In this document: positions 27 to 63,363 of the stretch, in pieces
Layout of the letters: the number at the start of each line of letters is the position of its first letter
Numbering within the stretch: the first letter of the stretch is position 1
Virus record (IMG/VR): IMGVR_UViG_3300027749_002876
Location: 186,001-250,000 of that record
Direction: 5' to 3' (one strand)
Length of the DNA stretch: 64,000 nucleotides
Translations under genes and position numbers: made by a program
Notes under the pieces: generated by a model
What the model was told of the DNA's origin: nothing
Seen by the model: only the letters and a program-made list of their open reading frames with translations
Database searches by the model: none

Positions 27-1502
27 TTATTTTTCGTCTAAGTAATCTTCATTTAGTCCTAAATCGCTATGAGGGAAAGCTATATAGCTATCGCCGTGCT
101 CATCACCTATTCTAATGACAAATACTCCCGCATCGTCATCCCCGGATTCATTTTGTCCTATTTCCCAGCCCATTGAGTGTAATGTTTGTTGGGCTTGCCT
201 CATTTGTTGCTCAGTACCATTCCACCACATTGCGGCTAACTTACGTAGTATTTCTTCATCAGGCTCTCTATCATCACTGCCGTTAGGGGCAAACTCTGTC
301 AAATCAGTTATACGCATTGGCCCTCTACGTTTGAACTTATTGTTCTCTTGTTCATATGTAGTGGGGTAAGGAATACCTAAGCTCTCATCAACTTCACTGC
401 CTGTAATAGCTTGCAACAAAGCACGTGCAACTACACGATCCTTTTCCTTTTCATCTTCAGGAAGTTGACTATAAGATTGCATAGCTAACTTAGCACGTTT
501 TAATTTCTTCTCATCTGGTGTGGGAGTATCTAACTGTAGTTGGCCTTTATAGTCAGCTGCCGCTGTTACATTCCAACCTTTGTGAATAGCATCACTGATA
601 GCTTCAATATCGGTTACACCTGCATCAATTAGTCGCTTTGCGGCTTTTGCTGATTGCATATTTGCCATCCAACCAAAGTTTGCACCCGGTGTACTACGAC
701 CATAATGGTAGGCGTCATCTAACGCTTTATCGCTGATATGTGCAAGTTGTTCTACTGATAGACTTGCACCCTCTTTTACTTCTCGCGGTTTAATATGATT
801 TATAACTGCTGGGGTTTTCTTCTCAGGAGGAATATATACATGTTGTTTAGGCTGTGTTACTGTTTTTTGGATAGGCACTGATTTTACTACTGGATCAACT
901 TTGATATTCTCTGCTAACTCATTACCCATACCCATGTCTAACATTTTAACAACATTGGCAGCAAGCTTAGGGTTCTTTTGAGTGACTGGATATAAACTCA
1001 TAACCATTGCAGTCTTACGTTTATCATTCAATGTAGGCCAAGCATCACGTATCTCACTTGCACTTGTGATACCAGGACCAAACTCTACTGTAGGTAGATA
1101 TGTAATATATGCATGTTTGCTGAATGGTTGTAACCTTTTAGGTGGCCATGGTTGGAAGTAAGCCGGACTGCCATCTTTCTTCGTCCCACCTGGCTTAGGT
1201 TGTTCATTCTTATCTTTCTCACTACGAACAAAGATTAATACATCTTCGTTAGGATTGTAATGACTTGTGATTTCTTCTGCTTTGAAAGGACTTTTAACTT
1301 GTACAAAGTGTTTGTCAGCAACACCTGCAAGTTTTGCTAGTTTCTCTTTGATACTAAAAGGAAATGGTCTTGTTTTTGTATCATTGGTGGCGGCTACGTA
1401 TACATCAGCATCAGGAAAAGCCTTGATAGCACTTTGATACAGTGAAGCATGTCCTGCGTGAAACGGATGAAAGCCTCCCGGCATGACTACAATTTGTCTC
1501 AT
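27..1502 (-). CDS. HIGH-family (cytidylyltransferase-like) nucleotidyltransferase fused to a RyR-like domain and further small domains; probable head-packaged protein
   Basis: N-terminal PGGFHPFHAGH (HxGH) and SASEIR; central DAIHKGW...SYSQLPEDEKEKDR matches the RyR-repeat pattern; several hydrophobic-x-E sites between modules. Confidence 0.7.
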   Translation of the reverse strand: MRQIVVMPGGFHPFHAGHASLYQSAIKAFPDADVYVAATNDTKTRPFPFSIKEKLAKLAGVADKHFVQVKSPFKAEEITSHYNPNEDVLIFVRSEKDKNEQPKPGGTKKDGSPAYFQPWPPKRLQPFSKHAYITYLPTVEFGPGITSASEIRDAWPTLNDKRKTAMVMSLYPVTQKNPKLAANVVKMLDMGMGNELAENIKVDPVVKSVPIQKTVTQPKQHVYIPPEKKTPAVINHIKPREVKEGASLSVEQLAHISDKALDDAYHYGRSTPGANFGWMANMQSAKAAKRLIDAGVTDIEAISDAIHKGWNVTAAADYKGQLQLDTPTPDEKKLKRAKLAMQSYSQLPEDEKEKDRVVARALLQAITGSEVDESLGIPYPTTYEQENNKFKRRGPMRITDLTEFAPNGSDDREPDEEILRKLAAMWWNGTEQQMRQAQQTLHSMGWEIGQNESGDDDAGVFVIRIGDEHGDSYIAFPHSDLGLNEDYLDEK

Positions 1503-1503
1503 A

Positions 1504-1869
1504 TCAATAACTTAACTTTACGAAATTAACTACACCTTGTGAAAAATCTTCAACTTTGGCTCTCATATAAACATAGCTACCTTCAATGTTAGTATACGTT
1601 GAAGCATTGGAATTTGCATTGCCATCAGCTACTAATTCATATACTTTGAACCAATCATTTTCAGTCGGAGTTGTAGCTAATGTAGCTTGTATAATGATAT
1701 TACCATTAACTTCTGTTAGGTTAATGTTAACAGTTTGCAATGCTCTAGGTGTTATGATATATGATGCGGCTGGTTGTTCATCACCTACTACTGTATAAGC
1801 ATTACCGTTATCTACGGTTGCACTCCATGCAGTTTGTGGCAATAAAATGAGTGTAGTTGTTTGGCTCAT
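1504..1869 (-). CDS. hypothetical beta-rich protein, probably virion structural
   Basis: 121-aa ORF coupled to neighbours; IIIQATL...WF and YVYMRAKV resemble the C-terminal half of 53724..54491. Confidence 0.6.
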   Translation of the reverse strand: MSQTTTLILLPQTAWSATVDNGNAYTVVGDEQPAASYIITPRALQTVNINLTEVNGNIIIQATLATTPTENDWFKVYELVADGNANSNASTYTNIEGSYVYMRAKVEDFSQGVVNFVKLSY

Positions 1870-2033
1870 TATGCTTTTACAACCTCAACAACAACACTGT
1901 CGCCAATTAATTCTTGGGCAACTTGTTCTAAAGCCGTTTCTATTTCAGGACTAGTGATACTAGTACCTGAATCATTGTCTTTTACTATTTTACTAAAAGT
2001 GATTACGATTGATTCTGTTACAATCTTTGCCAT
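1869..2033 (-). CDS. small hypothetical protein, 54 aa (MAKIVTESIVITFSKIVKD...VVVEVVKA), absent from the ORF track
   Basis: ATG at 2033 preceded by GGAG and a late promoter; its TAA overlaps the next ATG (TAATG). Confidence 0.8.
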   Translation of the reverse strand: MAKIVTESIVITFSKIVKDNDSGTSITSPEIETALEQVAQELIGDSVVVEVVKA

Positions 2034-2035
2034 GG

Positions 2036-2065
2036 TAAATACTCCATTTTATTAGAGTATTTATC
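2036..2065 (-). promoter_or_regulatory. late promoter GATAAATA within a 9-bp hairpin that covers the SD
   Basis: TAAATACTC (2036-2044) / GAGTATTTA (2055-2063); promoter at 2058-2065. Confidence 0.7.
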
Positions 2066-2068
2066 ATT

Positions 2069-2800
2069 TTAAACAGCTTCTGGTCGTTTTTCTAATTTAT
2101 AGCGTTTTCCAAGCATATCCCCGTAAATCAATGCTAGATAGCTTAACGTGCTTTCATCATCGTAATCAATAAAATGACTAGCATTACTAAAACGATATCT
2201 CCAACTATGCTGATTTGTGTGAACCGAGCCTTTAGCCCAATGTTTTAGTGCAGGACTAGGGTATAGTGACTTGTTTTTCTTAAACATATCGTTCAGGTCT
2301 ATTGCAAATGTCCCCTCAACTCTCCTAGATTTTAGATAAACTCTAAATTTATGATTAGGATTACGCACAAAATGCTTAATCCCAATAAAGTTAGATATAT
2401 GTGATTGAGTTACATCTATTTCAATGCCTGGCATATAATTTACAATATCTTTTAACTCTTGTAAATCATTACTGAATACCCCTACAGTATTATGTTCAAT
2501 TCTAATTGTAGAATTTTTCTTCTTTTTTAAGTCATTACGCCACTTAAGAAATGATGCTAATATTGCCAAATTCTCACGCACTTCATCCCGTTCATATGAG
2601 ATAGTATTATGACTGTAGCCTACTGCAGGTGCTTCTAATCTATCAACTAATTCCTGAATGTCATGTTTAATGTACCATGTATAACGAACACCTACTAGAT
2701 TAAATCTAGCTCGGTATTCGTATTTGTTATAGTAATGCTGGTCCCGATATTCATAAAAATCAACACCCGGTACGTCTTCAACTGATTTCAATAATCCCAT
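2069..2800 (-). CDS. hypothetical protein
   Basis: 243-aa ORF overlapping the clpA end; C-terminal FIDYDDESTLSYLALIYG loosely resembles the 56-57 kb paralog motif. Confidence 0.7.
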   Translation of the reverse strand: MGLLKSVEDVPGVDFYEYRDQHYYNKYEYRARFNLVGVRYTWYIKHDIQELVDRLEAPAVGYSHNTISYERDEVRENLAILASFLKWRNDLKKKKNSTIRIEHNTVGVFSNDLQELKDIVNYMPGIEIDVTQSHISNFIGIKHFVRNPNHKFRVYLKSRRVEGTFAIDLNDMFKKNKSLYPSPALKHWAKGSVHTNQHSWRYRFSNASHFIDYDDESTLSYLALIYGDMLGKRYKLEKRPEAV

Positions 2801-5051
2801 CTTCGCCTACTCTTGCTGTTGATTTTTGTACAACGTTGTACTCAATACTATCTTCATTCATAACCGCTGTGATAACACTATTCTTAATGCGTTCAAAAAG
2901 AATCTTCTTACTCAATGGTACACGAATCAATTCATCGATCTTACGTGCTAGTGGTCTTGCACCCATCTTCTTATCATAACCCTGTTCAGCTAGATATTCA
3001 ATAACAGGTTCTGATAAGTTTAATGTAATATCGTGCTTGTCCAATAGTGATTCTTTAAGCTGTTCAGTAAACTTAATAACAATTTTCTTAATTGAAAGCA
3101 TGTCAAGTTTGTTAAACTTACATACTAAATCTAAACGATTTCTAAACTCGGGTTTAAAGAATTCTTTCAATGCTTTGTCATCTTCGCCAGTCTTTTCTTG
3201 ACTACCGAAGCCAATGTTGTTTCGTTCACTGTCACTACTACCTAAATTACTTGTTAAGATAATAACACAGTTCTTACAGTTAACTTCTTTACCATTAGAC
3301 CCAGTGACACGACCTTCATCTAACATCTGTAAAAAGATGTTAAAAATATCAGGGTGTGCTTTCTCTACTTCATCAAACAACAAGATACTGTGTGGGTTCT
3401 TGCTCAAGTCATTAACTAATCGTCCGCCACCGACTTGACTATCACCAAAGCCAACATAACCAGGGGGAGGACCAATCAAACTTGATACAGAATGTTTCTC
3501 ACCGTATTCACTCATATCATATTTGAGTAATGTCATGTCGAGGTTTTTACTTAATAACTTAGCCAATTCTGTTTTACCTGTACCTGTTGGGCCTAAGAAT
3601 AAGAAACTTGCTGTAGGCTTAGTTTCACTACCGATGCCTGCAAAACTAACATAGATACGTTCTAATACTTTGTCAATTGTTTCATCCTGACCATACAGTT
3701 TACCCTTGACGTTAACTTCAAGTGTTTGAATAAGATTCATATTATCACCACTAAGTTTGTCAGCAGGTACACCTGTAAAGCGTTCAACCTGTTGAAAAAT
3801 CATATCTTTGGTGATTTGAATTCCCTTATTGCCATCAACACGTTGACGGGCACAAGCCGCATCAAGTAAATCAATACTTTTGTCAGGGTTTTTACGGTCA
3901 TGAATATATCGTAAAGCTGATTCAACTGAGGCAATAACTGCTTCACTTGTAATTTCAACGTCATGGAAGTCATTTAATCGTGTGCTTAATCCAGTAAGAA
4001 TACTAATTGTACTTTCTTTACTTGGCTCATCAATAGAGACACGATAGAATCTACGCATTAATGCACGATCCTTCTCAAACGATTCGTAATATTCTTCCCA
4101 AGTAGTACTGGCGATAACTTTCAATGTACCTTTAGTGATAGCTGGTTTAATTAAGTTAGCAAAGTCAACCGCACCACCATTTGCATTACCACTACCACTC
4201 ATTGTATGAGCCTCATCAATGAATAATATTGCTTTCTTTTTTGTGTTAAGTGCTTCTAATACACCTTTAACTTTTTCTTCAAAGTCACCGCGATATTTAC
4301 TTCCAGCAAGTAGTGAACCTACTTCAAGACTATATACTTCATGTCCAACAATAAATTCAGGACAATCACCTAGTGCAATTGAATTAGCAAGACCTTCAGC
4401 GATAGCAGTTTTACCTACACCCGGATCACCTACCATCAATACATTTGCTTTAAATCGTTTAGCAAGAACATTAATGATTTCATCTAATTCTTTTGTTCTT
4501 CCAATTAGAGGTTCTAATTTATTTTGACGGGCAAGTTCACTTAGATTAGTAGTATATTCTTCTAAGATTTCATCTGCTTGACCTTCACTTAATTTACTGG
4601 TAAATTCAGCACCCTTGTATGTTTTTTGCCAGTGATTTACAAACTCTTGTTTATTGACACCATATTTCAATAAGAAATAATGTGCATGACTATTACCTTC
4701 ACTTGCCATACTTAAGTACAAGTCAATTGTAGTAACTTGTCTACGACCGGTAAATAACACTTGTGTTACACTACGATTCATAACACGTTCTAAACTGTTT
4801 GTTTTACGTGGTTGAACTTGGTCAACTGTAACGTTACTTAGTTCAATTGCATGTAGTCCATCAAGATAGCTAGTTACTTCCTGAACCATTAAATTAACAT
4901 CAGCTCCAAAACTATCCAGACATTTATTAAATGGTGTATGGGTAATTAATGCTAACAATAAATGCTCAACTGTGCAATATTGATGTTTTCTTTCTTTTGC
5001 AAAAGAAATAGCCTGTTCAATAATGTTTTCGATTTCGGGTGAATTGGTCAA
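2778..5051 (-). CDS. clpA: ClpA-like Hsp100 AAA+ unfoldase
   Basis: Clp N-domain (EHLLLAL); Walker A motifs GDPGVGKT and GPTGTGKT; pore loops KYRG and GYVG; IGF loop (NNIGFG); GARPL; no ClpB middle coiled coil; TTG start after AAGGA. Confidence 0.92.
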   Translation of the reverse strand: MTNSPEIENIIEQAISFAKERKHQYCTVEHLLLALITHTPFNKCLDSFGADVNLMVQEVTSYLDGLHAIELSNVTVDQVQPRKTNSLERVMNRSVTQVLFTGRRQVTTIDLYLSMASEGNSHAHYFLLKYGVNKQEFVNHWQKTYKGAEFTSKLSEGQADEILEEYTTNLSELARQNKLEPLIGRTKELDEIINVLAKRFKANVLMVGDPGVGKTAIAEGLANSIALGDCPEFIVGHEVYSLEVGSLLAGSKYRGDFEEKVKGVLEALNTKKKAILFIDEAHTMSGSGNANGGAVDFANLIKPAITKGTLKVIASTTWEEYYESFEKDRALMRRFYRVSIDEPSKESTISILTGLSTRLNDFHDVEITSEAVIASVESALRYIHDRKNPDKSIDLLDAACARQRVDGNKGIQITKDMIFQQVERFTGVPADKLSGDNMNLIQTLEVNVKGKLYGQDETIDKVLERIYVSFAGIGSETKPTASFLFLGPTGTGKTELAKLLSKNLDMTLLKYDMSEYGEKHSVSSLIGPPPGYVGFGDSQVGGGRLVNDLSKNPHSILLFDEVEKAHPDIFNIFLQMLDEGRVTGSNGKEVNCKNCVIILTSNLGSSDSERNNIGFGSQEKTGEDDKALKEFFKPEFRNRLDLVCKFNKLDMLSIKKIVIKFTEQLKESLLDKHDITLNLSEPVIEYLAEQGYDKKMGARPLARKIDELIRVPLSKKILFERIKNSVITAVMNEDSIEYNVVQKSTARVGEDGIIEIS

Positions 5052-5074
5052 AGTTTTGTTTTCCTTTTGTTTAT

Positions 5075-5884
5075 TTACTTAGATTTAGCACGTATAATGC
5101 TATCAGTTATTTCTTTATCAATTATATCAGGTAAAATAGGTTTTATCAATATGATTTGGTCTCCGTAAATTGATGTAGATTGAATTGGCATACCTTCTTT
5201 GGCTATTTTTAAATGCATATGAGGCTGTGTTCTGGGTGGTACTGTAACCATTAATTTTTTACCAGAAAAAGTAGTGAATTCAATATCTGTTCCTACAATC
5301 AAATCTAATACCGATACAGGTTGTGTGCAGTATAAATCATTTCCTCTTCTTTCAAATTTTAAATGATTTTGAATAATAAATTCAACAATTAATATAGCCT
5401 GAGGAATAACATTCTCATAGCGTACCTGTGACCCGTGATTAACACCTTTGGGAATTTCAATAGTAATTGCATGGTTACCATGAGGTGTTTGTAATTGTAA
5501 ATTTTGACTATCACCATGGTATGCTTGTTCTAATGTAATATTAACCTGTGTCCTAAATGCATGTGGAGTGTTTGGACGTCTAGCATTATGTTGTTGAAAC
5601 ATTTGGCCAAACAAATCGTTTATATCATTATTGAAGTTAAAATTAAATCCACCTCCGCCCCCACCCGGAAATCCGAATGGATTACCTTGCGGCATTGGGT
5701 TATCATATTGTTTTCGTTGATTTGGGTCACTAAGAATGCGATATGCTTCTTCTATCTTTTGAAATGTAGCAGTATCACCACCTTTATCAGGGTGATGTTT
5801 ACCTGCTAGTTTTCTATATGCTTTTTTTATATCGTCTGGTGTAGATTTTTTACCTACACCTAGAATTGAGTAATAGTCTGTCAT
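5075..5884 (-). CDS. dnaJ: DnaJ/CbpA-type (class II) co-chaperone
   Basis: J domain DYYSILGV...HPDKGG, G/F-rich linker, C-terminal domain, no zinc finger. Confidence 0.92.
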   Translation of the reverse strand: MTDYYSILGVGKKSTPDDIKKAYRKLAGKHHPDKGGDTATFQKIEEAYRILSDPNQRKQYDNPMPQGNPFGFPGGGGGGFNFNFNNDINDLFGQMFQQHNARRPNTPHAFRTQVNITLEQAYHGDSQNLQLQTPHGNHAITIEIPKGVNHGSQVRYENVIPQAILIVEFIIQNHLKFERRGNDLYCTQPVSVLDLIVGTDIEFTTFSGKKLMVTVPPRTQPHMHLKIAKEGMPIQSTSIYGDQIILIKPILPDIIDKEITDSIIRAKSK

Positions 5885-5926: not shown

Positions 5927-6532
5927 TTATGATTTGCCTTCAATTTTTTCTTTTGTTCGCCCATATGCGGCTATACCAAGAACAGCACCCATAGCTATGT
6001 GATAAAGACCAGCACCTTGCAATGTTAATGGTTGCCATTGCATAGTGACACTACCCTTACTCATTGCTTGTAATAAACTCCATAGTATGGGGAATACAAC
6101 AAAGTCCATTGTACAAGTTAACATATAGATCCAACCCATAACTGGACGCCATTTTTTGTTGATCCAATCTGTATTATCATTAGCTACTAATACATCTGCA
6201 CCACTGGCGGCATTTGTTGGAGCGGCTCCTGTGAGTACTGGTTGATTGCTGTTTGATTGATTAATGTTTTGTGTGCTTCCGAATCCTGAACTTGACTGTT
6301 GATTGAAGCCTGGACTTGAAAACGATCCTGATGAACCAAACGAACCACCACCGAAGCCTCCTGTCGAAGGTGAGCCAAATGCTGAACTCCCGCCAAATGA
6401 TGTGTTTGAACCATAACTACTACCTTGAGGAAATTGTTGAATTGACGGATCAGATGCTAGCATCTCATGGTGCTCATCATCTAACGCCATTGGTTGTTCA
6501 AAATTAGTTTTCTTAGGTAATATAGTTTCCAT
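5927..6532 (-). CDS. membrane protein resembling the GTA 3TM holin family, with an FG/S/G-rich N-terminal region
   Basis: WRPVMGWIY...LGIAAYGRTKEK with two clear hydrophobic segments. Confidence 0.6.
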   Translation of the reverse strand: METILPKKTNFEQPMALDDEHHEMLASDPSIQQFPQGSSYGSNTSFGGSSAFGSPSTGGFGGGSFGSSGSFSSPGFNQQSSSGFGSTQNINQSNSNQPVLTGAAPTNAASGADVLVANDNTDWINKKWRPVMGWIYMLTCTMDFVVFPILWSLLQAMSKGSVTMQWQPLTLQGAGLYHIAMGAVLGIAAYGRTKEKIEGKS

Positions 6533-19378: not shown

Positions 19379-19431
19379 ATCTATTTTACCTTATTTAGTA
19401 TTTATCGTTATTAATAAAACGGGTGCCCAAA

Positions 19432-21827: not shown

Positions 21828-22457
21828 TTATTTAGATGCTCTTGCACCAGTTGCTGGCAACGGTGGACGTTTTATTGTACTCATTGGGCTTTTCTCACCC
21901 ATCTGTTTGTCATCCAAGTATGGCTTGAATGGATCGAATGCGTCAGGTGTTTTTGTTCCTGCATAAGGAATATCAATCTCTGAATCCTTCATTTGGTCTT
22001 TAATACTCTTTAAGTATGAATCACCATAATTTTTACTAGCTTCTTTAGCGCCAGGCTGTTCTTCTAATTCAGTATGTAATAACAATGGATTATGACTCAT
22101 TTCATTGGCATAACCTACTTGTTCATTATCAATGCTGTCATTAAAATCAGTTCCAACAACACGAACCATATCAACTTGATAACCCAATAGTTGTGCAATC
22201 TGTTGAATCATTGGCTCTGTCGCTGGATAGCGAAAATCTGCTTTGATAATAGTGATAGACTGATTACTCAAGTTAGGAAATCCATATGGATTCTTTTGAA
22301 TAGGAGTCTTTACTGGATCACTAATTCTGATAGGATCGAATTTATTAAGATTGTACTTAAACAAATCTATAAAATTCTTATCCACATCGCCAGCAATTTT
22401 GATAGTGTAATTGTATGTATGTACACTTTCTGTTATATAATGTTTGAGGCTTTTCAT
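21828..22457 (-). CDS. hypothetical head-associated protein
   Basis: N-terminus MKSLKHYITE resembles the T4 capsid-targeting sequence; late promoter at 22477-22484. Confidence 0.6.
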   Translation of the reverse strand: MKSLKHYITESVHTYNYTIKIAGDVDKNFIDLFKYNLNKFDPIRISDPVKTPIQKNPYGFPNLSNQSITIIKADFRYPATEPMIQQIAQLLGYQVDMVRVVGTDFNDSIDNEQVGYANEMSHNPLLLHTELEEQPGAKEASKNYGDSYLKSIKDQMKDSEIDIPYAGTKTPDAFDPFKPYLDDKQMGEKSPMSTIKRPPLPATGARASK

Positions 22458-25668: not shown

Positions 25669-25704
25669 TTTTTAATCTCCTGTATACTTATTTATCTTTA
25701 ACAT

Positions 25705-29304: not shown

Positions 29305-29432
29305 TTTATTTTTCCTTTATGTAAAATTATGAGGTTTACTACCTTTTTGCATACTATTATTTATCTAATATCTTTAAAAAAACATAACTACTATGCTGTT
29401 TTGTGCCTTCGAAGGTTCCTGATAAATATATC

Positions 29433-32158: not shown

Positions 32159-33112
32159 TTAGGCGTAACCATACCCTGCGGCGCCTAGATAACTTCTAGC
32201 AGTACCAACTCCTGTGGTATTTGTGGCAACAACACCTGCATTACTTACTAAATTGGTTATTGATGTTGCTGATCCGGTATCTCCATATCCAAATATAGCT
32301 TTATCAGCACCATAAATTGCGGCTGCTAGACCGGTTCTGGCAGTACCAACACCTGTAGTGTCACTGGCAATAGTACCGGTATTACTTACTAGATTAGTTA
32401 TTGCAGTAACTCCAATAGTACCACCATATCCATATCCAAATATAGCTGTATCAGTACCGTAGCCGGTTGCCGCCATATAACCTCTAGCAGTACCAACACA
32501 AGTAGTATTACTAGCAACTACTCCCGTATTGCTTACTAAGTTGATCGTTGACACTTGTGTACCACTGGAATTTTCACCAAATGCAAACATAGCTTTATCT
32601 GTTCCATATCCTACCGCCGCAATTTGATTCCTAGCAGTACCGGAACTCCCTACATCAGTAGCAACTACGCCCGTATTTGACACTAAGTTAGTCATCGATG
32701 CTCGGCTAGAATTATTAATCCATCCAAATCCAAATATAGCTTTATCTGTTCCATAACTTGCGGCTGCTAATCCATTTCTAGCAGTGCCTACACCAGTAGT
32801 ATCTGTAGCAACTACACCAGTATTTGATACTAGATTAGTTACTGCTGTTACAGCCACTGCTGGATAAACTGATCCAACATCACCGTATCCAAATATACCT
32901 TTGTCAGTACCATAAGTAGCGGCGGCTAAACTATTTCTAGCAGTGCCTACACCAGTAGTATCTGTAGCAACTACACCAGTATTTGATACTAGATTGGTCA
33001 TTGATACTAAAGTAGTTGAATAACCATATCCAAATATTGCCTTGCTTGAGGGGGGAGGTTGCTTTGTTACACTTACCCCGGCTCCAAATGAAATTCCTGC
33101 TCCAATATCCAT
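32159..33112 (-). CDS. six-repeat Kelch-like beta-propeller protein, paralog 2
   Basis: 6 x KAIFGYG-[variable]-TNLVSNTGVVATDTTGVGTAR-xx-LAAAGYGTD; own late promoter at 33132-33139 and AAGGA SD. Confidence 0.75.
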   Translation of the reverse strand: MDIGAGISFGAGVSVTKQPPPSSKAIFGYGYSTTLVSMTNLVSNTGVVATDTTGVGTARNSLAAATYGTDKGIFGYGDVGSVYPAVAVTAVTNLVSNTGVVATDTTGVGTARNGLAAASYGTDKAIFGFGWINNSSRASMTNLVSNTGVVATDVGSSGTARNQIAAVGYGTDKAMFAFGENSSGTQVSTINLVSNTGVVASNTTCVGTARGYMAATGYGTDTAIFGYGYGGTIGVTAITNLVSNTGTIASDTTGVGTARTGLAAAIYGADKAIFGYGDTGSATSITNLVSNAGVVATNTTGVGTARSYLGAAGYGYA

Positions 33113-33163: not shown

Positions 33164-34108
33164 TTACACGGAACCATAACTTGCGGATGCGAGCCAACCT
33201 CTGGTAGTACCTACACCTGTAGTATCGGTAGCTACAACTCCTGTGTTTGATACTAGGTTGGTCATTGATAACTTAGTATTGGTAACATTTTGACCATATC
33301 CAAATATAGCCTTATCGGTACCATAACCTGCGGCTGCTAATGAATATCTAGCAGTGCCAACACCGGTAGTATCACTAGCAATAGTACCTGTATTACTTAC
33401 TAGATTAGTTATTGCTGTTACATCCCCGGATACTGTACCAAAACCAAATCCAAAAATAGCTTTATCAGTGCCGTAGCCTGCGGCTGCTAATGCATACCTA
33501 CTAGTACCGACACCTATCACATCATTACCAACTACACCTGTATTTGAAACTAGATTGGTGATTGAGTTTGGACCACCACCTGTTCCATATGAAAAAATAG
33601 CTTTATCAGTACCGTATCCTGCGGCTGCTAACGCATATCTAGCAGTGCCAACACCTGTTACATCATTACCAACTACACCTGTATTTGAAACTAGGTTAGT
33701 TAGTGAATAAGTTGTTGCTCCGATTCCATATCCAAATATAGCTTTATCAGTTCCATAGCCTGCGGCTGCTAACGAATATCTAGCAGTGCCAACACCCGTA
33801 GTATCTGTAGCAACTACACCTGCATTTGATACTAGATTGGTCACCGATACTGCCGCAAATGACCCATCTCGCCCAAATCCAAATATAGCTTTATCAGTAC
33901 CATAACCTGCGGCTGCAAGTTGTTGTCTAGCAGTGCCAACACCCGTAGTATCTGTAGCAACTACACCTGTGTTTGATACTAAGTTAGTTATCGAAATTTG
34001 TGTACCGGAATTATTAGTACCATATCCAAAAATTGCTTTATATGAGGGTGGGGGTTGTGGAGTTACACTTACTCCACCGCCAAATGAAATTCCTGCTCCA
34101 ATATCCAT
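33164..34108 (-). CDS. six-repeat Kelch-like beta-propeller protein, paralog 1
   Basis: same six-repeat architecture; own late promoter at 34128-34135. Confidence 0.75.
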   Translation of the reverse strand: MDIGAGISFGGGVSVTPQPPPSYKAIFGYGTNNSGTQISITNLVSNTGVVATDTTGVGTARQQLAAAGYGTDKAIFGFGRDGSFAAVSVTNLVSNAGVVATDTTGVGTARYSLAAAGYGTDKAIFGYGIGATTYSLTNLVSNTGVVGNDVTGVGTARYALAAAGYGTDKAIFSYGTGGGPNSITNLVSNTGVVGNDVIGVGTSRYALAAAGYGTDKAIFGFGFGTVSGDVTAITNLVSNTGTIASDTTGVGTARYSLAAAGYGTDKAIFGYGQNVTNTKLSMTNLVSNTGVVATDTTGVGTTRGWLASASYGSV

Positions 34109-35805: not shown

Positions 35806-35845
35806 CCTTAGGATTCAAGCGTAGGACATTGCGATAAATACTATT

Positions 35846-45431: not shown

Positions 45432-45758
45432 TTAAACTCTAAAACTCTCTCCACACCCGCATCGGTCACGCTCGTTCGGGTTGGTGAACTCAAAACCCTC
45501 ATTTAACCCATTACGCACATAATCTACGACCATGTTCTTTAAATACACATCATGTTTTTTATCTACTAAAATAATAAAACTTGGTTGTGCATAATTTATT
45601 ATTGATTCATCATATTTGTATTCATCAACATATTCTAATACATAAGCAAGACCAGAGCACCCGGTCGTTTTTACACCTATACGAATACCAAGGCCTTTAC
45701 CTCGTTTTGATATTATTTGTTGAATTTTGTTTGATGCTTTTTCTGTTAAGCTTATCAT
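45432..45758 (-). CDS. iscA: A-type Fe-S cluster carrier (IscA/HesB)
   Basis: TTGCSGLAY and C-terminal CGCGESF. Confidence 0.95.
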   Translation of the reverse strand: MISLTEKASNKIQQIISKRGKGLGIRIGVKTTGCSGLAYVLEYVDEYKYDESIINYAQPSFIILVDKKHDVYLKNMVVDYVRNGLNEGFEFTNPNERDRCGCGESFRV

Positions 45759-46084
45759 TGCGGTTGTTGCATTGCATTTTGAGCCATCTGTGCTACTATT
45801 TTTTGATTCTCATCGGGCTGTGCTGCCGGAGCAGGCTCATTGCCTTTAAAAATAACATTGTCACCCTGAATGTTTGCTATGCTCTTGTTTAGTGGAGCTT
45901 TCTTAATCATATCATACAAATCAGATTTGTCAATAACTATATCATTGTCTCTATAATATTGCAATAATTCTGGAACTGTCCAATCACTATGTACTTCTCC
46001 GGAGTCAATCTCACTCTTTAGTTGACTAGTACTTGCAACCAGTCTAACTAATAGAGGACTGCCTTCAAATTCATACAATCGCAT
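45755..46084 (-). CDS. hypothetical late protein
   Basis: 109 aa; N-terminus MRLYEF. Confidence 0.7.
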   Translation of the reverse strand: MRLYEFEGSPLLVRLVASTSQLKSEIDSGEVHSDWTVPELLQYYRDNDIVIDKSDLYDMIKKAPLNKSIANIQGDNVIFKGNEPAPAAQPDENQKIVAQMAQNAMQQPQ

Positions 46085-46086
46085 GG

Positions 46087-46800
46087 TTATCTCTTAGGAC
46101 GACCTGCACCGCCTAGAGGTTCTTCTTCTGGAGTTTCAAGGTCAACGTTCATTTCTTCTTCACCGCCACCGGGTAGTGGTTCTTCCATGCCAACGTCAGT
46201 ATTCATCTCGCCACCGGGTGCAGGAACACCCATATCACCGCCTGCATCAAAAGCTTCAGCACCTCCTTGACCAGTAATACCGTTCAATGCTGTTTTTAAT
46301 GTTGCTTGACTTTGTGTCAATGCGGCTTGTAATGAAGTCAATGCTTCAGATACTTGTTGATTAAATGTCTCACTTTCGTTAACACCAATCTCAGATTGAA
46401 CCGAATCAGTTAATGCCGGTAATTCTTTTACCAACATATCACTAACTTCTTCAACCATTTTTTGTACTTGGTCTACCAAGTCTTGTGCAGCCAAAACTAC
46501 TTGTGACTTTTCAACTTCTTCATTTTCTACAACAATACGTGGTTTACGTAAGCTGATTTCAGCAAAATGCTTACTCAATGCTTGTTCCATAAACACAAGT
46601 TTTAGATATGAAGAATTCTGCTGGCTTTCATAGAAATCGTTAGATTTCTTTGTTTCGCTCATTAGGCCACGAACTCTTGTAAGCATATCTCTTGCTTGAG
46701 CATAAGACATTTTACGAACATTAAACGGAACGTTATAATGCTCTTTTAACGCTTTAGTGGCGTTTTCGATTGGGTTTTTGTCAAAATCAGTTAATTTCAT
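46087..46800 (-). CDS. probable prohead core/scaffold-like protein
   Basis: long acidic coiled coil; P/G/E-rich tail; late promoter at 46827-46834. Confidence 0.5.
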   Translation of the reverse strand: MKLTDFDKNPIENATKALKEHYNVPFNVRKMSYAQARDMLTRVRGLMSETKKSNDFYESQQNSSYLKLVFMEQALSKHFAEISLRKPRIVVENEEVEKSQVVLAAQDLVDQVQKMVEEVSDMLVKELPALTDSVQSEIGVNESETFNQQVSEALTSLQAALTQSQATLKTALNGITGQGGAEAFDAGGDMGVPAPGGEMNTDVGMEEPLPGGGEEEMNVDLETPEEEPLGGAGRPKR

Positions 46801-48354: not shown

Positions 48355-49506
48355 TTATCTTCCAGCAAGATTTTGACGACTAAAGCCCATTCTATCTACA
48401 AATTTAAGCCCGTGACTTACAAAACCCTCTTGAGTTTGTGTGCCATTATCTAAATAACCTTTGACAGGGGCTGTCATTGCGGCTTTATTAAGCTGATCCA
48501 CAATGTTCATTTTGAGATTATAGATGGCTACCCATATAGTAAATGCACCCACTACTCCATTTTTGTTAACTTCTAAATGCTGATTAATCTTCTCACGCAT
48601 CTTATCAGTCATTGGTCTTGACTGAACATACTCAATAAATCCTGCATACAAATCATTCAAGTCACCCGCTACAATACGCTTATTAATATATGTAGTAAAT
48701 AATTGATTGAATGTATTTCTAGCCTGGGGCGCAGTGGTCATTAATTGCTCTACTGCTTCTCCATATTTTTGTATAGTTGCTTGTGCTTTTTTAAATAATG
48801 TTGAATTAATTTTCAAGTTAGGTGTGATTGGCATTTTAGCAGGCAATATAGCTACATCACTGTTATTCTTAAGATTACCAATAGTTCCATCTAATGGGGA
48901 TGATTGGTCGGTTGTTAATGCGGTCGGTGGAATAAATCCGTGTACTACAATACCAGAATTTTTACCATCTAAAAATTTACCCAAGTCGCTGTTTGCATCT
49001 ACTGTATATGTAATACCTTTAGGGTTTGCTTTGAATGTGTATAGCCCGTTCTTTTCTGCTAATGGTTTACTGAATAACAAATCACCCCAATAATAACCCT
49101 TGCTTCTATCGGACTTCTCTAAGCCAGGCCATATCTGTGCAATTAACTGATGCAAATCTGAACGATTTACTCCACGTGCCATATCATACTGAGCAAACTG
49201 TTCCGGGCTGAATACTTGACGACCACTACCATCTTTCTTGTTGAACATATGTTTGTCTAATATAGTGAACTTACCATTACTGTTACGTCCAAATATCAAT
49301 GCAGGGTAACCATCCCATTTGATTGTTACTTTTTCTGGATTAGCTACTGTATCGGCCATTGCTTGTATGGCTTGATTAGCACCCTGTGTGCCACGCAAAA
49401 ATATCAAATCTTCAGGATGATCTAAGTGACCCTTATCTTCGGCTATGACATTGGTGATATTATCTACTTTATTTCTAAGTAGTGCTAATGCTTCGGATAG
49501 ATTCAT
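48355..49506 (-). CDS. ligase/capping-enzyme superfamily nucleotidyltransferase-like protein (DUF6267-like)
   Basis: TIKWDG (KxDG motif I), WGDLLF, QEGFV, LKFVDR. Confidence 0.6.
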   Translation of the reverse strand: MNLSEALALLRNKVDNITNVIAEDKGHLDHPEDLIFLRGTQGANQAIQAMADTVANPEKVTIKWDGYPALIFGRNSNGKFTILDKHMFNKKDGSGRQVFSPEQFAQYDMARGVNRSDLHQLIAQIWPGLEKSDRSKGYYWGDLLFSKPLAEKNGLYTFKANPKGITYTVDANSDLGKFLDGKNSGIVVHGFIPPTALTTDQSSPLDGTIGNLKNNSDVAILPAKMPITPNLKINSTLFKKAQATIQKYGEAVEQLMTTAPQARNTFNQLFTTYINKRIVAGDLNDLYAGFIEYVQSRPMTDKMREKINQHLEVNKNGVVGAFTIWVAIYNLKMNIVDQLNKAAMTAPVKGYLDNGTQTQEGFVSHGLKFVDRMGFSRQNLAGR

Positions 49507-51006
49507 TTACAGCTTGCCTTGCTTTTTTAACATGTCTAACATTTTAGCATCGTCAGGATTGTTCGGATCTAATTTATTACCACCAACCGATAGGTCAGAA
49601 CTGCTTGCTAATTCTTTTTGTAGGGCTGCCAATATTTTTTGTTTGTTTGCAGGAGTCAAATCTTTTAATAAACCCTGAATCTGTTGATATGCTGTTTTAG
49701 TTTTTTGACCTGATGCATTATTGGATGTAGTGTTAGGTGCAGTTGTATTAGGTGGAGTTGTATTATTAGGTGGAGTTGTATTATTAGGTGGAGTATTTTT
49801 TGGTTGTTCTTCAGCTTGAGCATGTTGTACAGCCCATGCCAAATCAGCTAATTTAGGTAATACTGATTTACCTTTATCTTTATTATAAGTTTGTTCTAGC
49901 TCTTTAGCCAATTCTTTTAATCTAGAAACTACTGCCCTATCACTTATAGTGACACCCTTCATAAACTGTGTGAAGAAGTTAGTGATATATTGACTAATAG
50001 ATTGTTTAGACCTTGAAGCTTCAGATAAGATATTTTCAAACAAAAAGTTTAGTTTATCAAATTTAGAATCTTCAGCAACCCTATCACCACCTAAGTTTTG
50101 AGCCATCTGTCCAAATGCATTTTTTCCTGAATTTTTAAGTCTGGAATTGCGCTTAAACTGATTTTCAGGTTTTGTAACAGGTTCCATAATATCTGCTTGT
50201 TTTTTCTGTCTGACATTAGCCGCACTTTTATTAAACTGATCTGCAGGTAATTTACTCATTGGAGACATTTGGTCTTGAGCAGTTTGTGTTGCACTTGTTT
50301 GTTTCTGTTGTCTTGTACTAGTAGCTGTTTTATTAAACTGGTCTGCAGGTAATTTACTCATTGGAGACATTTGGTCTTGAGCGTTCTGAGTAGCAACACC
50401 CTGTTTTTGTTGTCTTGTACTAGTAGCTGTTTTATTGAATTGGTCTGTAGGTAGCTTACTGAATTGACCATTCTGAGACATTTGGTCTTGAGCTACACCG
50501 GCTGCGGCAGCTTGTTTTTCTTGTCTGATTTGCTCTGGAGATTTTTTAGTAGTTGCCAACTGATTAGCCATCTGACCAAAAGCATTTGCTCCTGTTTCTG
50601 GAGATTGTTTAGGAGTTGTTAACTGATTAGCCATCTGACCAAAAGCATTTGCTCCTGCTGTAGGTGCACCTGCAGGTGTCGTAACTGGTGTCGTAACTGG
50701 TGTAACTTTTGGATTAGCAATAGGAGTATTAACTTTTGTTGTTACAGGCTTAGTTACGGCAGAAGAATTACCGGAAGTGTTAAGGTCAATCAATCCACTA
50801 CTAATGCCACTTTGTAATCCACTATACGCACGACTGGTGAAATTCTTAATGAATTCATCTTTAACCATCTGGTCTTGTGTACTTAATACATTCTTGCGAC
50901 CCAATGAGCCTAATCCAGTTCTAAGAGCGGCGGATCCATAATCGCCTATAAATGAGCTTAGGTCTATTTCATTTAGTTTGGGTTTTTTAAATTCAGTCAG
51001 CTTCAC
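49507..51006 (-). CDS. low-complexity repeat protein, probable head-internal
   Basis: MKLTEF...LNE start; internal Q/T/A-rich repeats. Confidence 0.65.
   Translation of the reverse strand: MKLTEFKKPKLNEIDLSSFIGDYGSAALRTGLGSLGRKNVLSTQDQMVKDEFIKNFTSRAYSGLQSGISSGLIDLNTSGNSSAVTKPVTTKVNTPIANPKVTPVTTPVTTPAGAPTAGANAFGQMANQLTTPKQSPETGANAFGQMANQLATTKKSPEQIRQEKQAAAAGVAQDQMSQNGQFSKLPTDQFNKTATSTRQQKQGVATQNAQDQMSPMSKLPADQFNKTATSTRQQKQTSATQTAQDQMSPMSKLPADQFNKSAANVRQKKQADIMEPVTKPENQFKRNSRLKNSGKNAFGQMAQNLGGDRVAEDSKFDKLNFLFENILSEASRSKQSISQYITNFFTQFMKGVTISDRAVVSRLKELAKELEQTYNKDKGKSVLPKLADLAWAVQHAQAEEQPKNTPPNNTTPPNNTTPPNTTAPNTTSNNASGQKTKTAYQQIQGLLKDLTPANKQKILAALQKELASSSDLSVGGNKLDPNNPDDAKMLDMLKKQGKL
50195..50655 (-). 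repeat. intragenic repeats: about 3 x 102-111 bp (QDQMS..SKLP.DQFNK) and 2 x GANAFGQMANQL
   Basis: near-identical DNA copies; an additional 18-bp PPNNTT tandem near 49745-49796; boundaries approximate. Confidence 0.85.
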
Positions 51007-61824: not shown

Positions 61825-62853
61825 TTACACAGACTTCATACATGTAGTACGTGCAAGATTCTTCCAGTTGCCGGGGCTAATCTTTACTAAGTCAGCAATC
61901 TTCAAGCACATACGCAAGGACACTTCACGCAATTTCGTATGATTGTCCCACATAAAGTCAATCACAATTTGTGATTGTTCTTCATTAAAATCATAGTCTT
62001 TGAACAAACCACCATCAGCATCACGATGGACCTGCTTGATACGCAACATCTTATCACGATCACCATCAATAGTCAGGTCCAGAAAGTGACAACGTGATTG
62101 CAATGCTTCTAAGTGATCCTGTAATTTCTTAGACTTCAAGTTGCCGAATTTCAAGTTAGTGATAAAGATAGCACTACCATTGAAGTTGAAAGTATTCGGG
62201 ATACCTTCTTCACGCAACAAACGTGAATCACTGTTCCAGCAAATTCTACGTGTCTTACCTGAATCAAGTGCGGCCTTCAAAATGTTCAAACTCAAGTCAT
62301 CAGTAAAAACACTATCACAATCATCAAAAATTAACACATTCTTTGTGTCAGAATATTTGTACAGTTGACTATACAAACCCAATGCTGTCATCGCACCTTT
62401 CACAATTTGAAAGCGAACTTTCTTACCTGCAAGCTTGTCAAACATACTTGCTTTTTCCATTTGTGTCTCAACACCATAACTTTTGCCGACACCGGGCGGG
62501 CCTGAAACAATCATAGCACGGATATCACCATTGATACAAGCACGTGACATTTCATCAAGGACCTCGAAACGAGTAGCAATACGGTCCATTGCTTCTGTTT
62601 CAGTTTCTTTCACAACTTCTTTTGCAAATTTTACTGTATTTTCTATCACATTATCTCCATTCAAAAATTCAATTTGATTAATATTATCAACAAGTACCTT
62701 AACTGCAGGGATATTGATTGCGAATTGACCGTCATTTTTTACAGTCACATAACTACCTTTTTTACTTGTCTGAAAACCCTTGACTAGTGTAAACTCAGTA
62801 TTGACTACTGCTTGTTTACGATAAGAGCCAGAGAGAATGCGAATAGTAGACAT
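61825..62853 (-). CDS. AAA+ family ATPase
   Basis: SGPPGVGKS, LIFDDCD, FITN, ALQSRC. Confidence 0.85.
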   Translation of the reverse strand: MSTIRILSGSYRKQAVVNTEFTLVKGFQTSKKGSYVTVKNDGQFAINIPAVKVLVDNINQIEFLNGDNVIENTVKFAKEVVKETETEAMDRIATRFEVLDEMSRACINGDIRAMIVSGPPGVGKSYGVETQMEKASMFDKLAGKKVRFQIVKGAMTALGLYSQLYKYSDTKNVLIFDDCDSVFTDDLSLNILKAALDSGKTRRICWNSDSRLLREEGIPNTFNFNGSAIFITNLKFGNLKSKKLQDHLEALQSRCHFLDLTIDGDRDKMLRIKQVHRDADGGLFKDYDFNEEQSQIVIDFMWDNHTKLREVSLRMCLKIADLVKISPGNWKNLARTTCMKSV

Positions 62854-62884
62854 TTGTTTCCTTTATTTCAGTGTCAATACAAGT

Positions 62885-62913
62885 ATTGTATCACGTTATC
62901 CATTTATTGTCAA
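62885..62913 (-). promoter_or_regulatory. early sigma70 promoter TTGACA-N17-TACAAT
   Basis: shares AAATTTGACAATAAATGG with the next two promoters. Confidence 0.85.
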
Positions 62914-62923
62914 ATTTTGTGCC

Positions 62924-63301: not shown

Positions 63302-63334
63302 TTTGTAGTCCTCTTCTTTACTGTCTAAGATTCT

Positions 63335-63363
63335 ATTATAGCAGAAAGCCCATTTATTGTCAA
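63335..63363 (-). promoter_or_regulatory. early sigma70 promoter TTGACA-N17-TATAAT
   Basis: exact consensus with extended TG. Confidence 0.9.

What the first reader, a model, noticed from the sequence alone, without database searches (positions are those of the whole stretch)
27..1502. Nucleotidyltransferase-RyR fusion that looks like a protease-cut capsid cargo polyprotein
Seen: an HxGH nucleotidyltransferase domain, a RyR-repeat-like domain (H..W ... Y..L.E.EKEKDR) and a small C-terminal domain. They are separated by LAE, VKE, VDE, LTE and LNE sites. An internal MRITDLTEF resembles the N-termini of other late proteins here (MKLTEF, MRLYEF). Known: the T4 prohead protease gp21 cuts after hydrophobic-x-Glu. 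Inference: unrelated domains have been concatenated, are packaged into the head, cut apart and possibly injected.
Basis: partly seen in the sequence, partly recalled or inferred. Interest (0 to 1): 0.62.

Follow-up and report, generated by a model that had tools for sequence, protein, structure and literature searches.

The report
Shuffled cargo polyprotein of jumbo phage
This gene of an uncultured ~350 kb T4-related phage strings a conserved adenylyltransferase to swappable small domains joined by Leu/Val-x-Glu sites of the kind the phage's own head protease cuts. It looks like a way to load, cut apart and deliver a changing set of counter-defence proteins, but neither cutting nor packaging has been shown.

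Summary

**Modules**
- A (residues 1-198): HxGH adenylyltransferase of the PPAT/NadD type.
- B (245-373): divergent phage RyR/R12-like domain.
- C (404-491): small domain of unknown fold.

**Comparative evidence**
- 171 distinct homologues show 97 architectures. A is always first, at 73-92% identity, and sometimes stands alone. The cassettes after it differ and can change order.
- Nearly all homologues end in DY[LI]xE[KN].
- Similarity breakpoints pile up on [LIVM]xE. In this protein they fall exactly at E198, E244, E373 and E403. 166 of 167 homologues have the motif just after A.
- Stand-alone B genes carry short N-terminal leaders ending in LxE. The internal MRITDLTE is such a leader, still with its ATG and a Shine-Dalgarno-like AGAGGG.
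- In one homologue a TAT signal begins directly after the junction Glu.

**Genomic context**
- A contig with an identical copy of the gene, and three complete relatives, encode a T4 gp21-type prohead protease and a gp23-type capsid protein.
- The operon follows a GATAAATA motif shared with tail genes.

**Verdict**
A hypervariable cassette polyprotein, probably cut by the prohead protease. Packaging, cleavage and injection are inferred, not shown. It is a new variant of known kinds (T4 internal proteins, polyvalent proteins).

The parts
27..1502 (-). Whole ORF, 491 aa plus stop: cassette polyprotein
   Evidence: identical copies in two IMG/VR contigs (L002, L069)
909..1502 (-). Module A, residues 1-198: HxGH (HAGH 15-18) adenylyltransferase with a TSASEIR motif at 146-152. 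Conserved at 73-92% identity in homologues.
   Evidence: Pfam PF01467 above cut-off. AF2 model pLDDT 90.3. Foldseek best match NadD, E 6e-6. VIA-align gives PPAT Z 12.4 and NadD Z 11.1, effectively tied.
909..917 (-). Junction 1, LAE 196-198: predicted cut after E198
   Evidence: Similarity breakpoint. pLDDT below 50 in the model. 166 of 167 homologues have [LIVM]xE here. Codons vary synonymously among ELAE sites.
771..908 (-). Linker segment, residues 199-244. Pro/Lys/Val-rich and ends in VKE 242-244 (junction 2, window 771-779).
   Evidence: Breakpoint at E244. B-module matches start at residue 241-245 in homologues.
384..770 (-). Module B, residues 245-373: five-helix RyR/R12-like domain, ending in VDE 371-373 (junction 3, window 384-392). 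Invariant residues include H307, W310, D355 and R356.
   Evidence: AF2 pLDDT 93.6. Best BFVD matches are mostly phage RyR-domain proteins, prob 0.96-1.0, TM 0.48-0.55. Pfam RyR is below cut-off. PDB profile search: the five hits are all RyR entries. Invariant columns.
294..383 (-). Linker segment, residues 374-403, with an embedded former gene start: AGAGGG at 321-326, ATG of M396 at 315-317, and the leader MRITDLTE ending in junction 4 (LTE 401-403, window 294-302).
   Evidence: Sequence read directly. Stand-alone B genes start with similar leaders, e.g. MKIKDLTE and MKINELKE. Breakpoint at E403.
54..293 (-). Module C, residues 404-483: small acidic domain of unknown fold. It is also found directly after A, or in other genes, elsewhere.
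   Evidence: 81 segments in family 2. Order A-C-B occurs in P0008 and P0017. C-like stretches occur elsewhere in loci L016, L147, L167 and L168. No informative Atlas match.
30..53 (-). Conserved C-terminal tail NEDYLDEK (residues 484-491), preceded by LNE 483-485 and itself ending L-D-E-K
   Evidence: Nearly all of 171 distinct homologues end in DY[LI]xE[KN], whatever cassettes precede it. It is unique to this ORF in the 91 kb contig.
2058..2065 (-). GATAAATA promoter-like motif, 24 nt upstream of the three-gene operon 1869..2033, 1504..1869, 27..1502
   Evidence: 20 copies against 5.7 expected. 17 lie 5-60 nt upstream of ORF starts, including tail sheath, tail fibre-like and virion structural genes. 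No gaps between the operon's ORFs.

Best explanation
The gene encodes a polyprotein built from exchangeable cassettes.

**Architecture.** A conserved N-terminal adenylyltransferase (A) and a conserved C-terminal octapeptide frame a variable middle. In this phage the middle holds a RyR/R12-like nucleotide-binding domain (B), a small acidic domain (C) and two short linker peptides. Each boundary is a [L/V]-x-Glu site.

**Proposed mechanism.**
1. The protein is made late in infection.
2. It is taken into the prohead.
3. The phage's T4 gp21-type prohead protease cuts it after E198, E244, E373 and E403.
4. The freed modules travel in the capsid and enter the next host with the DNA.
5. There B would bind or cleave ADP-ribose-derived defence signals, and A would act as an adenylyltransferase, possibly rebuilding NAD.

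**How new combinations arise.** Formerly separate leader-bearing genes fuse in frame, and cassettes recombine at the junctions.

**What is shown and what is inferred.**
- Shown: the modular architecture, the selected junction motif, the fossil gene start, the protease in the lineage, and the shared promoter-like motif.
- Inferred: packaging, cleavage, injection and the biochemical activities.
For: 1. **Cassettes.** 171 distinct homologues have 97 architectures. A is always first. Other orders such as A-C-B occur, and A-only proteins of 215-240 aa exist.
2. **Junctions.** Breakpoints concentrate on [LIVM]xE, and in this protein on exactly the four internal sites. ELAE and LNEF junctions vary synonymously, which points to selection on the peptide rather than the DNA. 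The junction after A is disordered in the model.
3. **Leaders.** Stand-alone B genes begin MSTELFRKYIDIINE|S or MKANEILKE|N. The core protein encoded next to the protease begins MDNKKFEQLIDLIINE|N. The internal MRITDLTE keeps its ATG and an AGAGGG upstream.
4. **New N-termini make sense only after cutting.** In P0004 a TAT signal covers residues 199-217, directly after E198, and is followed by TonB_C and M48 peptidase domains.
5. **Protease.** A Peptidase_S77 (gp21-type) gene and a gp23-type capsid gene are present in the contig with the identical gene copy and in three complete relatives. The capsid protein has LLAE|S about 44 residues in, and the scaffold protein is rich in LxE. T4 gp21 cuts after L/I-x-E (PMC9026906).
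6. **Late expression.** The GATAAATA motif is shared with tail genes.
7. **Module identities.** See for A, and for B. Phage RyR-domain proteins cleave or sequester 2'/3' cADPR (PMC13232231).
Against: - There are no proteomic or biochemical data.
- The protein starts directly with the first strand of the Rossmann fold and has no N-terminal targeting leader. T4 internal proteins need one (PMC9026906).
- A is highly conserved and can stand alone, so its main role may be in the cytoplasm.
- The gene lies far from the head genes, next to glycosyltransferase, chaperone and lysis-type genes.
- The motif is short, about 1.7% of positions, and also occurs inside modules (IKE 51-53, LPE 347-349).
- In related polyproteins the commonest junction, GVAE, is conserved at the DNA level. 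There the conserved feature could be a recombination site rather than a cut site.
- The homologues are related, so the counts overstate independence.
Confidence: 0.58

Rival explanations
1. An uncut, cytoplasmic multidomain enzyme. The cassettes stay joined, and the [L/V]xE stretches are flexible linkers left by recombination, with no protease involved.
For: - There is no N-terminal leader.
- A is a metabolic-type enzyme that also exists alone.
- The GVAE junctions of related proteins are an 18-nt DNA repeat using rare codons, as expected for a recombination site.
- The gene is not in the head module.
Against: - Junctions of the ELAE and LNEF type are conserved as peptide, not as DNA.
- The same motif ends the N-terminal leaders of stand-alone modules and of a prohead core protein.
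- A TAT signal placed internally, directly after a junction, would be useless without cleavage.
- The modules share no obvious common pathway, and 97 architectures exist.
Confidence: 0.2
2. Cut apart, but not in the capsid. Another protease, from phage or host, releases the modules in the cytoplasm, and they act in the producing cell rather than being injected.
For: - No targeting leader at the N-terminus.
- Neighbouring ClpA/B-like and DnaJ-like genes show that the phage handles protein quality control itself.
- NAD-related counter-defence is normally needed inside the infected cell.
Against: - The site matches the specificity known for gp21-type proteases, and these act inside proheads (PMC9026906).
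- No other protease gene was seen near the locus.
- The promoter-like motif is the one used by structural genes.
- The leaders resemble that of the core protein encoded beside the protease.
Confidence: 0.12
3. A functionally coupled NAD/ADP-ribose counter-defence enzyme. A (an NMN/NaMN adenylyltransferase) and B (a cADPR-binding or cADPR-cleaving RyR domain) work together as one protein, whether or not it is processed. This is compatible with the main explanation.
For: - A matches NadD.
- B is RyR-like, with H, W and D at the positions of the RyDEP ligand and catalytic residues.
- B is fused to A, or encoded immediately upstream of it, in 10 of 55 distinct loci.
- RyDEP feeds NAD resynthesis (PMC13232231).
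Against: - 41 of 55 A loci have no B nearby.
- PPAT scores as well as NadD.
- There is no Nampt gene in four complete relatives.
- B occurs in dozens of polyproteins without A.
Confidence: 0.3

Closest known systems
T4 internal proteins IPI-III and Alt: capsid targeting sequence plus gp21 processing
   Same: - Short N-terminal leaders ending in hydrophobic-x-Glu, here on stand-alone modules.
- A gp21-type protease in the genome.
- Diverse small counter-defence cargo.
- Alt is trimmed at both ends, which recalls the L-D-E-K end of this protein (PMC9026906, PMC3012670).
   Different: - Here several cargo units are fused in frame behind an enzyme, with cut sites between them.
- The fusion protein itself has no N-terminal leader.
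- It has a conserved C-terminal octapeptide with no T4 counterpart.
- Cleavage and packaging are not demonstrated.
Polyvalent proteins of phages and conjugative elements (Iyer et al. 2017, PMC5512222)
   Same: - Many unrelated effector domains in one polypeptide, varying between close relatives.
- Predicted to be delivered with the DNA and then separated.
- GNAT and peptidase domains also occur among the homologues here.
   Different: - Those proteins are proposed to be cut by an embedded zincin-like metallopeptidase domain. This protein has none and instead carries prohead-protease-type sites.
- No RyR domain is mentioned in that survey.
Ejection and inner-body proteins of phiKZ and SPN3US, cut by their prohead proteases
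   Same: Many head-internal proteins are cut after Glu at a three-residue motif by a gp21 relative, and fragments remain in the capsid (PMC9026906, PMC5694885).
   Different: - A different phage lineage. The capsid protein here is 62-67% identical to those of the Rak2/PA5oct/Vibrio 2.275.O group.
- Those substrates are not described as shuffled cassette arrays.
RyDEP, the phage RyR/R12-domain anti-Thoeris protein (PMC13232231)
   Same: - Module B is a small helical RyR-like domain.
- It has invariant His and Trp three residues apart and an invariant Asp that hhalign places on RyDEP D117.
- Its best fold matches are phage RyR-domain proteins.
   Different: - Sequence similarity is sub-threshold (Pfam 17 bits against a cut-off of 27.4; hhalign E 0.086).
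- It has about 55 extra N-terminal residues.
- No His sits at the RyDEP H100 position.
- Ligand binding is untested.
NadD (NaMN adenylyltransferase) and PPAT/CoaD
   Same: HxGH and ISxxxxR-type motifs, a Rossmann-like fold, and Z 11-12.4 over about 150 residues.
   Different: - Only 14-20% identity.
- An insertion at about residues 95-130.
- The substrate cannot be assigned.
- The phage genomes hold several other HxGH paralogues.

Membership tests
HxGH (HIGH) nucleotidyltransferase superfamily (PF01467) | N-terminal (H/T)xGH motif after the first strand | tested here: met
   GGFHPFHAGH at residues 9-18, invariant in 64 homologues. Pfam 24.1 bits against a cut-off of 21.
HxGH (HIGH) nucleotidyltransferase superfamily (PF01467) | Rossmann-like fold with a second ISxxxxR-type motif | tested here: met
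   AF2 pLDDT 90.3. Z 12.4 to PPAT and 11.1 to NadD over about 150 residues. TSASEIR lies at 146-152, with R152 invariant.
NMN/NaMN adenylyltransferase (NadD/NadM) | Pyridine-nucleotide substrate pocket and activity | tested here: inconclusive
   Foldseek ranks NadD first (E 6e-6), but VIA-align ranks PPAT equal or higher. There is no Nampt partner in four complete relatives.
RyR / R12 domain (PF02026) | Match to the family profile at its curated score | tested here: not met
   17.0 bits against a cut-off of 27.4 for the module. 11 of 67 homologues reach E <= 0.01, best 4.5e-4. I therefore describe the module as RyR-like and do not file it as a member.
RyR / R12 domain (PF02026) | Fold shared with known RyR-domain proteins | tested here: inconclusive
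   BFVD: 8 of the 11 best matches are named phage RyR-domain proteins, prob 0.96-1.0, TM 0.48-0.55, E 0.018-0.18. PDB: the top Foldseek hit is the Bt-hRyR chimera but at E 0.31. VIA-align gives Z 4.2 and 3.9 for RyR entries, within noise.
RyDEP-type anti-Thoeris proteins | Ligand and catalytic residues H75, W78, H100 and D117 | tested here: inconclusive
   H307 and W310 have the same spacing, and D355 aligns to D117. No His stands at the H100 position, where there are basic residues instead. The hhalign E-value of 0.086 is not significant.
RyDEP-type anti-Thoeris proteins | Binds or cleaves 2'/3' cADPR | not testable with these tools
   Needs a biochemical assay.
T4-type prohead-protease substrates / internal proteins | gp21-type (Peptidase_S77) protease encoded by the phage | tested here: met
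   Not present in the 91 kb contig. Present above cut-off in the 524 kb contig that holds the identical gene copy and in three complete relatives.
T4-type prohead-protease substrates / internal proteins | L/I-x-E at the processing sites | tested here: met
   The motif is present at the four module boundaries and conserved across homologues. Whether it is cut is not known.
T4-type prohead-protease substrates / internal proteins | N-terminal capsid targeting sequence | tested here: not met
   The protein starts MRQIVVMPGGFHPF, i.e. directly with the fold. Only an internal leader-like MRITDLTE is present.
T4-type prohead-protease substrates / internal proteins | Found in virions in processed form | not testable with these tools
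   There is no cultured relative carrying the gene and no proteome.
Polyvalent proteins (Iyer et al. 2017) | Two to fifteen unrelated effector domains in one phage protein, varying between relatives | tested here: met
Polyvalent proteins (Iyer et al. 2017) | Embedded zincin-like metallopeptidase for self-processing | tested here: not met
   No peptidase domain in this protein. One homologue, P0004, has an M48 peptidase cassette behind a TAT signal.

The most novel reading that the evidence does not exclude
A lineage of freshwater-type jumbo phages runs a combinatorial cargo system. Small effector genes, each with a cleavable leader, are fused in frame into arrays. The junctions of these arrays serve both as prohead-protease sites and, for the GGTGTGGCGGAA class, as recombination repeats. 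The injected arsenal can thus be reshuffled between near-identical phages. It includes RyR-type signal sponges, GNATs, and proteins with signal peptides meant for export from the next host's cytoplasm. The conserved C-terminal DYLxEK peptide would be a C-terminal capsid-loading tag, analogous to encapsulin cargo peptides.
Probability: 0.35. Interest if true: 0.88.

Novelty: new variant of a known kind. Interest (0 to 1): 0.72.

Why it matters
If the junctions are cut in the prohead, this shows how a large phage can pack many different counter-defence proteins and change the set quickly. It would do so by in-frame cassette exchange rather than by gaining whole genes.

It would extend the T4 internal-protein idea to polyproteins. 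It would also offer an alternative to the metallopeptidase route proposed for polyvalent proteins.

Thousands of metagenomic homologues would then become a catalogue of candidate injected effectors, with predicted mature ends that mass spectrometry can check directly. One of those candidates is a new RyR-like branch that may act on Thoeris signals.

The conserved leaders, cut sites and C-terminal tag could also be tried as tools for loading foreign proteins into capsids.

Tried and rejected
- **Protease with junction peptide.** Co-folding the protease (L084 1435-2076) with residues 186-250 gave no verdict (score 0.00, controls not run). It counts neither for nor against.
- **T4 late promoter.** TATAAATA is not enriched, with 2 copies against 12.9 expected. 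The related GATAAATA motif is enriched.
- **NARP2-type pathway.** No Nampt (PF04095) gene in four complete relatives.
- **Cultured relatives.** No DNA match for the region. The whole protein gave one weak protein match (24.6% identity to an uncultured 484 kb phage), and module B gave none.
- **Module C.** The Atlas search and Pfam gave nothing usable; YugN at E 0.18 was ignored.
- **Module B against solved structures.** The VIA-align wide search puts RyR entries within the noise of helical bundles. hhalign against RyDEP is not significant. A word search with the B profile found 611 relatives, and none of the 120 listed carries a Pfam label.
- **Discarded alignments.** In A1 and A2, MAFFT misplaced the tail or C rows, so neither was used for folding.
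- **N-terminal leader enrichment in B-containing ORFs.** Modest only: 74% against 35% within 18 residues. The background loci are themselves full of leader-bearing polyproteins.
- **DYLxEK as a shared tag.** No other ORF in the 91 kb contig ends this way.
- **Not used.** The big representative search, the reads tools and any alternative genetic code.
Full report
**What is in the sequence**

The finding covers one ORF, window 27..1502 on the minus strand, of 491 aa.
- It starts MRQIVVMPGGFHPFHAGH.
- Pfam CTP_transf_like matches residues 7-93 above its cut-off. Pfam RyR matches residues 300-368 below its cut-off.
MRITDLTEF starts at residue 396.
- The N-termini MKLTEF (ORF 49507..51006) and MRLYEF (ORF 45755..46084) exist. 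MNLSEA lies in the window too, and MRATEF and MRAKEF lie further along the contig.

**Which genome this is**

The window is part of a 91 kb IMG/VR contig rated 22% complete. It encodes a long tail sheath, tail tube, tail fibre-like proteins, helicases, primase, PhoH, a ClpA/B-like ATPase and a DnaJ homologue.

An identical copy of the gene lies in a 524 kb contig. Relatives lie in complete genomes of 349-364 kb, one of them with terminal repeats. All four records encode a T4 gp21-type prohead protease (Peptidase_S77) and a gp23-type capsid protein above the Pfam cut-offs. The capsid protein is 62-67% identical to those of Vibrio phage 2.275.O, PA5oct and Rak2-like coliphages. The phage is therefore a T4-related jumbo myovirus. 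No cultured phage carries this gene.

**The protein is a cassette array**

A word search found about 4000 homologues. Mapping 120 of them, plus 74 complete ORFs from viral contigs, gave the following.
- The first ~198 residues are always present and always first, at 73-92% identity. The rest is a mosaic.
- In query coordinates, similarity stops at 195-203, restarts at 241-245, stops at 373-374 and restarts at 401 or 367-373.
- The module order can change. P0008 and P0017 have A, then C, then B.
- Some phages have A alone, at 215-240 aa.
- 171 distinct proteins fall into 97 architectures built from about 39 segment families.
- Other cassettes include a GNAT, DUF5872, and a TAT signal followed by TonB_C and M48 peptidase domains.
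- Nearly all versions, even A-only ones, end in DY[LI]xE[KN]. That ending is unique to this gene in the contig.

**The junctions are a selected motif**

Across the 171 proteins:
- HSP ends lie within -1..+3 of the Glu of a [LIVM]xE motif in 41% of cases, against 7% for random positions.
- HSP starts lie at -5..-2 in 51%, against 6%.
- In this protein the supported boundaries are exactly E198, E244, E373 and E403.
- Directly after A, 166 of 167 proteins have the motif within 12 residues, against 14.5% of random windows. What follows it is unrelated from protein to protein.
- The last three residues of A (LAE) are disordered in the model.
- ELAE and LNEF junctions use many synonymous codon combinations, so the peptide is what is conserved.

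The sequences are related, so these numbers are not independent events. However, the motif recurs between different pairs of cassettes.

**Leaders and a fossil gene start**

Module B also occurs as a stand-alone gene of 130-150 aa, often immediately upstream of the A gene.
- These genes carry one of two N-terminal leaders: MSTELFRKYIDIINE followed by S/G/N, or MK(A/I)NE(I)LKE followed by N/S. Both end in hydrophobic-x-Glu just before the fold begins.
- The acidic core protein encoded beside the protease starts MDNKKFEQLIDLIINE. The scaffold protein starts with LINE, LNE and LDE sites. The capsid protein has LLAE|S about 44 residues in.
- In our protein, MRITDLTE|F in front of module C looks like the second leader type. 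Its ATG (window 315-317) is still preceded by AGAGGG (321-326). Module C was evidently once a separate leader-bearing gene.
- T4 internal proteins use a 10-residue N-terminal targeting sequence that gp21 removes after L/I-x-E, and Alt is trimmed at both ends (PMC9026906).

**A signal peptide after a junction**

In P0004 the Pfam TAT signal covers residues 199-217, beginning right after NELDE198. Other cassettes begin with signal-like hydrophobic stretches. Such signals work only at a free N-terminus. This is the best sequence-level argument that the junctions are really cut.

**Timing of expression**

The T4 late promoter TATAAATA is not enriched. GATAAATA occurs 20 times against 5.7 expected. 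Seventeen of those copies lie 5-60 nt upstream of ORF starts, including those of the tail sheath, a virion structural protein and tail fibre-like genes. One copy, at 2058-2065, precedes the gap-free operon 1869..2033, 1504..1869, 27..1502. Late expression is therefore likely, but it is inferred.

**What the modules are**

| Module | Model | Best matches | Reading |
|---|---|---|---|
| A (1-198) | pLDDT 90.3 | NadD by Foldseek, E 6e-6; PPAT Z 12.4 and NadD Z 11.1 by VIA-align | Adenylyltransferase; substrate open |
| B (245-373) | pLDDT 93.6, five helices | Phage RyR-domain proteins in BFVD, prob 0.96-1.0, TM 0.48-0.55 | RyR-like, not a proven member |
| C (404-491) | not modelled | no lead | Unknown |

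- **A.** The complete relatives lack Nampt and carry other HxGH paralogues.
- **B.** Sequence evidence is sub-threshold but consistent: Pfam RyR reaches E <= 0.01 in 11 of 67 members, and the five PDB profile hits are all RyR entries. In BFVD, 8 of the 11 best matches are named phage RyR-domain proteins. Matches to solved structures are weak.
- **B and RyDEP.** A 2026 preprint shows that phage RyR-domain proteins (RyDEP) cleave or sequester the Thoeris signals 2'/3' cADPR, using H75, W78, H100 and D117 (PMC13232231). B has invariant H307 and W310 at the same spacing, and D355 aligns to D117. It has no His at the H100 position, and the hhalign score is not significant.
- **Linkage of B with A.** Real but loose: B is fused in 5, adjacent upstream in 5, nearby in 4 and absent in 41 of 55 distinct loci.

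**The system is wider than this gene**

- The same contig holds an 806 aa protein at G000 3167-5587 (outside the window). It starts MDLKE|L, and after DVAE|A it carries a 283 aa cassette that is 90% identical to cassettes fused to A in other phages.
- Module B sits in more than 70 other polyproteins, typically between ...GVAE|G junctions, and most of these begin with leaders such as MKINEILTE or MIIDELFE.
- The GVAE junction is conserved as DNA. GGTGTGGCGGAA is used in 96 of 147 sites although GTG and GCG are rare codons. An ~18 nt repeat, CAAGGTGTGGCGGAAGG, occurs 120 times in 1.43 Mb of loci against 0.17 expected. This points to recombination at junctions as the shuffling mechanism.
- The junctions of the focal gene are not of this DNA class.

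**Conclusion**

Packaging, cleavage and injection are not shown. The lack of an N-terminal leader on the fusion protein is a real gap. The conserved C-terminal DYLxEK peptide is a candidate substitute tag, but that is speculation.

The closest known concepts are T4 internal proteins, and polyvalent proteins, which are thought to use a built-in metallopeptidase (PMC5512222). I found no description of this architecture in the searched literature. I rate it a new variant of a known kind. Confidence is about 0.58 in the full mechanism and above 0.9 in the cassette architecture itself.

Noticed in passing
Loci L102-L169 (e.g. L116, L131, L150); also G000 121-144, outside the window: An ~18 nt coding repeat, CAAGGTGTGGCGGAAGG (Q-G-V-A-E-G), marks cassette junctions in many polyproteins. 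It occurs 120 times in 1.43 Mb against 0.17 expected and uses rare codons. It is probably a recombination site for in-frame cassette exchange.
   Followed up: partly
window 2058-2065, 19399-19406, 25689-25696, 29358-29365, 35833-35840 and 15 more: GATAAATA is enriched (20 copies against 5.7 expected), and 17 copies lie 5-60 nt upstream of ORFs, including the structural genes. It is probably this lineage's late promoter. The T4 form TATAAATA is depleted (2 against 12.9).
   Followed up: partly
G000:C1 1-5587 (upstream of the window start; minus strand): Three more leader-bearing, LxE-rich proteins of 681, 356 and 806 aa. The 806 aa one appears to have a Pol-beta-type nucleotidyltransferase N-terminus, judged by eye only. 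It carries a 283 aa cassette that is fused to module A in other phages.
   Followed up: partly
window 30-53 (residues 484-491): The C-terminal octapeptide ([SN]xDY[LI]xE[KN]) is kept in nearly all homologues whatever lies before it, and is unique to this gene in the contig. Its role is unexplained; it may be a loading tag.
   Followed up: partly
P0004 residues 199-217 (homologue); L058, L016, L007 cassettes: A TAT signal, or signal-peptide-like hydrophobic stretches, start directly after the junction Glu. In P0004 they are followed by TonB_C and M48 peptidase domains. This suggests cargo meant for export from the cytoplasm of the next host.
   Followed up: partly
window 2778-5051 and 5075-5884: The phage encodes a full ClpA/ClpB-like double AAA+ protein with a Clp_N domain and a DnaJ homologue (J domain plus C-terminal domain) side by side. 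A holin-like 3-TM protein follows at 5927-6532.
   Followed up: no
IMG/VR contig of 524,565 bp (G001; loci L051 and L069): This contig holds two copies of the A gene, at 100% and 89% identity and with 491 and 389 aa products. It is about 1.5 times the size of its complete relatives, so it may be a chimeric or concatenated assembly of two related phages.
   Followed up: no
window 32159-33112 and 33164-34108: Two tandem paralogous genes of 317 and 314 aa both start MDIGAGISFG, and each has its own GATAAATA motif. Neither has a PHROG match.
   Followed up: no
window 61825-63572 (upstream regions): Three successive genes are preceded by near-identical sigma-70-like promoters (TTGACAATAAATGG ... 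TATAAT-like). These probably mark an early gene block.
   Followed up: no
window 46087-46800, 21828-22457, 48355-49506: Further ORFs have leader-like starts (MKLTDF, MKSLKHYITE, MNLSEA). They are candidates for other protease-processed head proteins.
   Followed up: no
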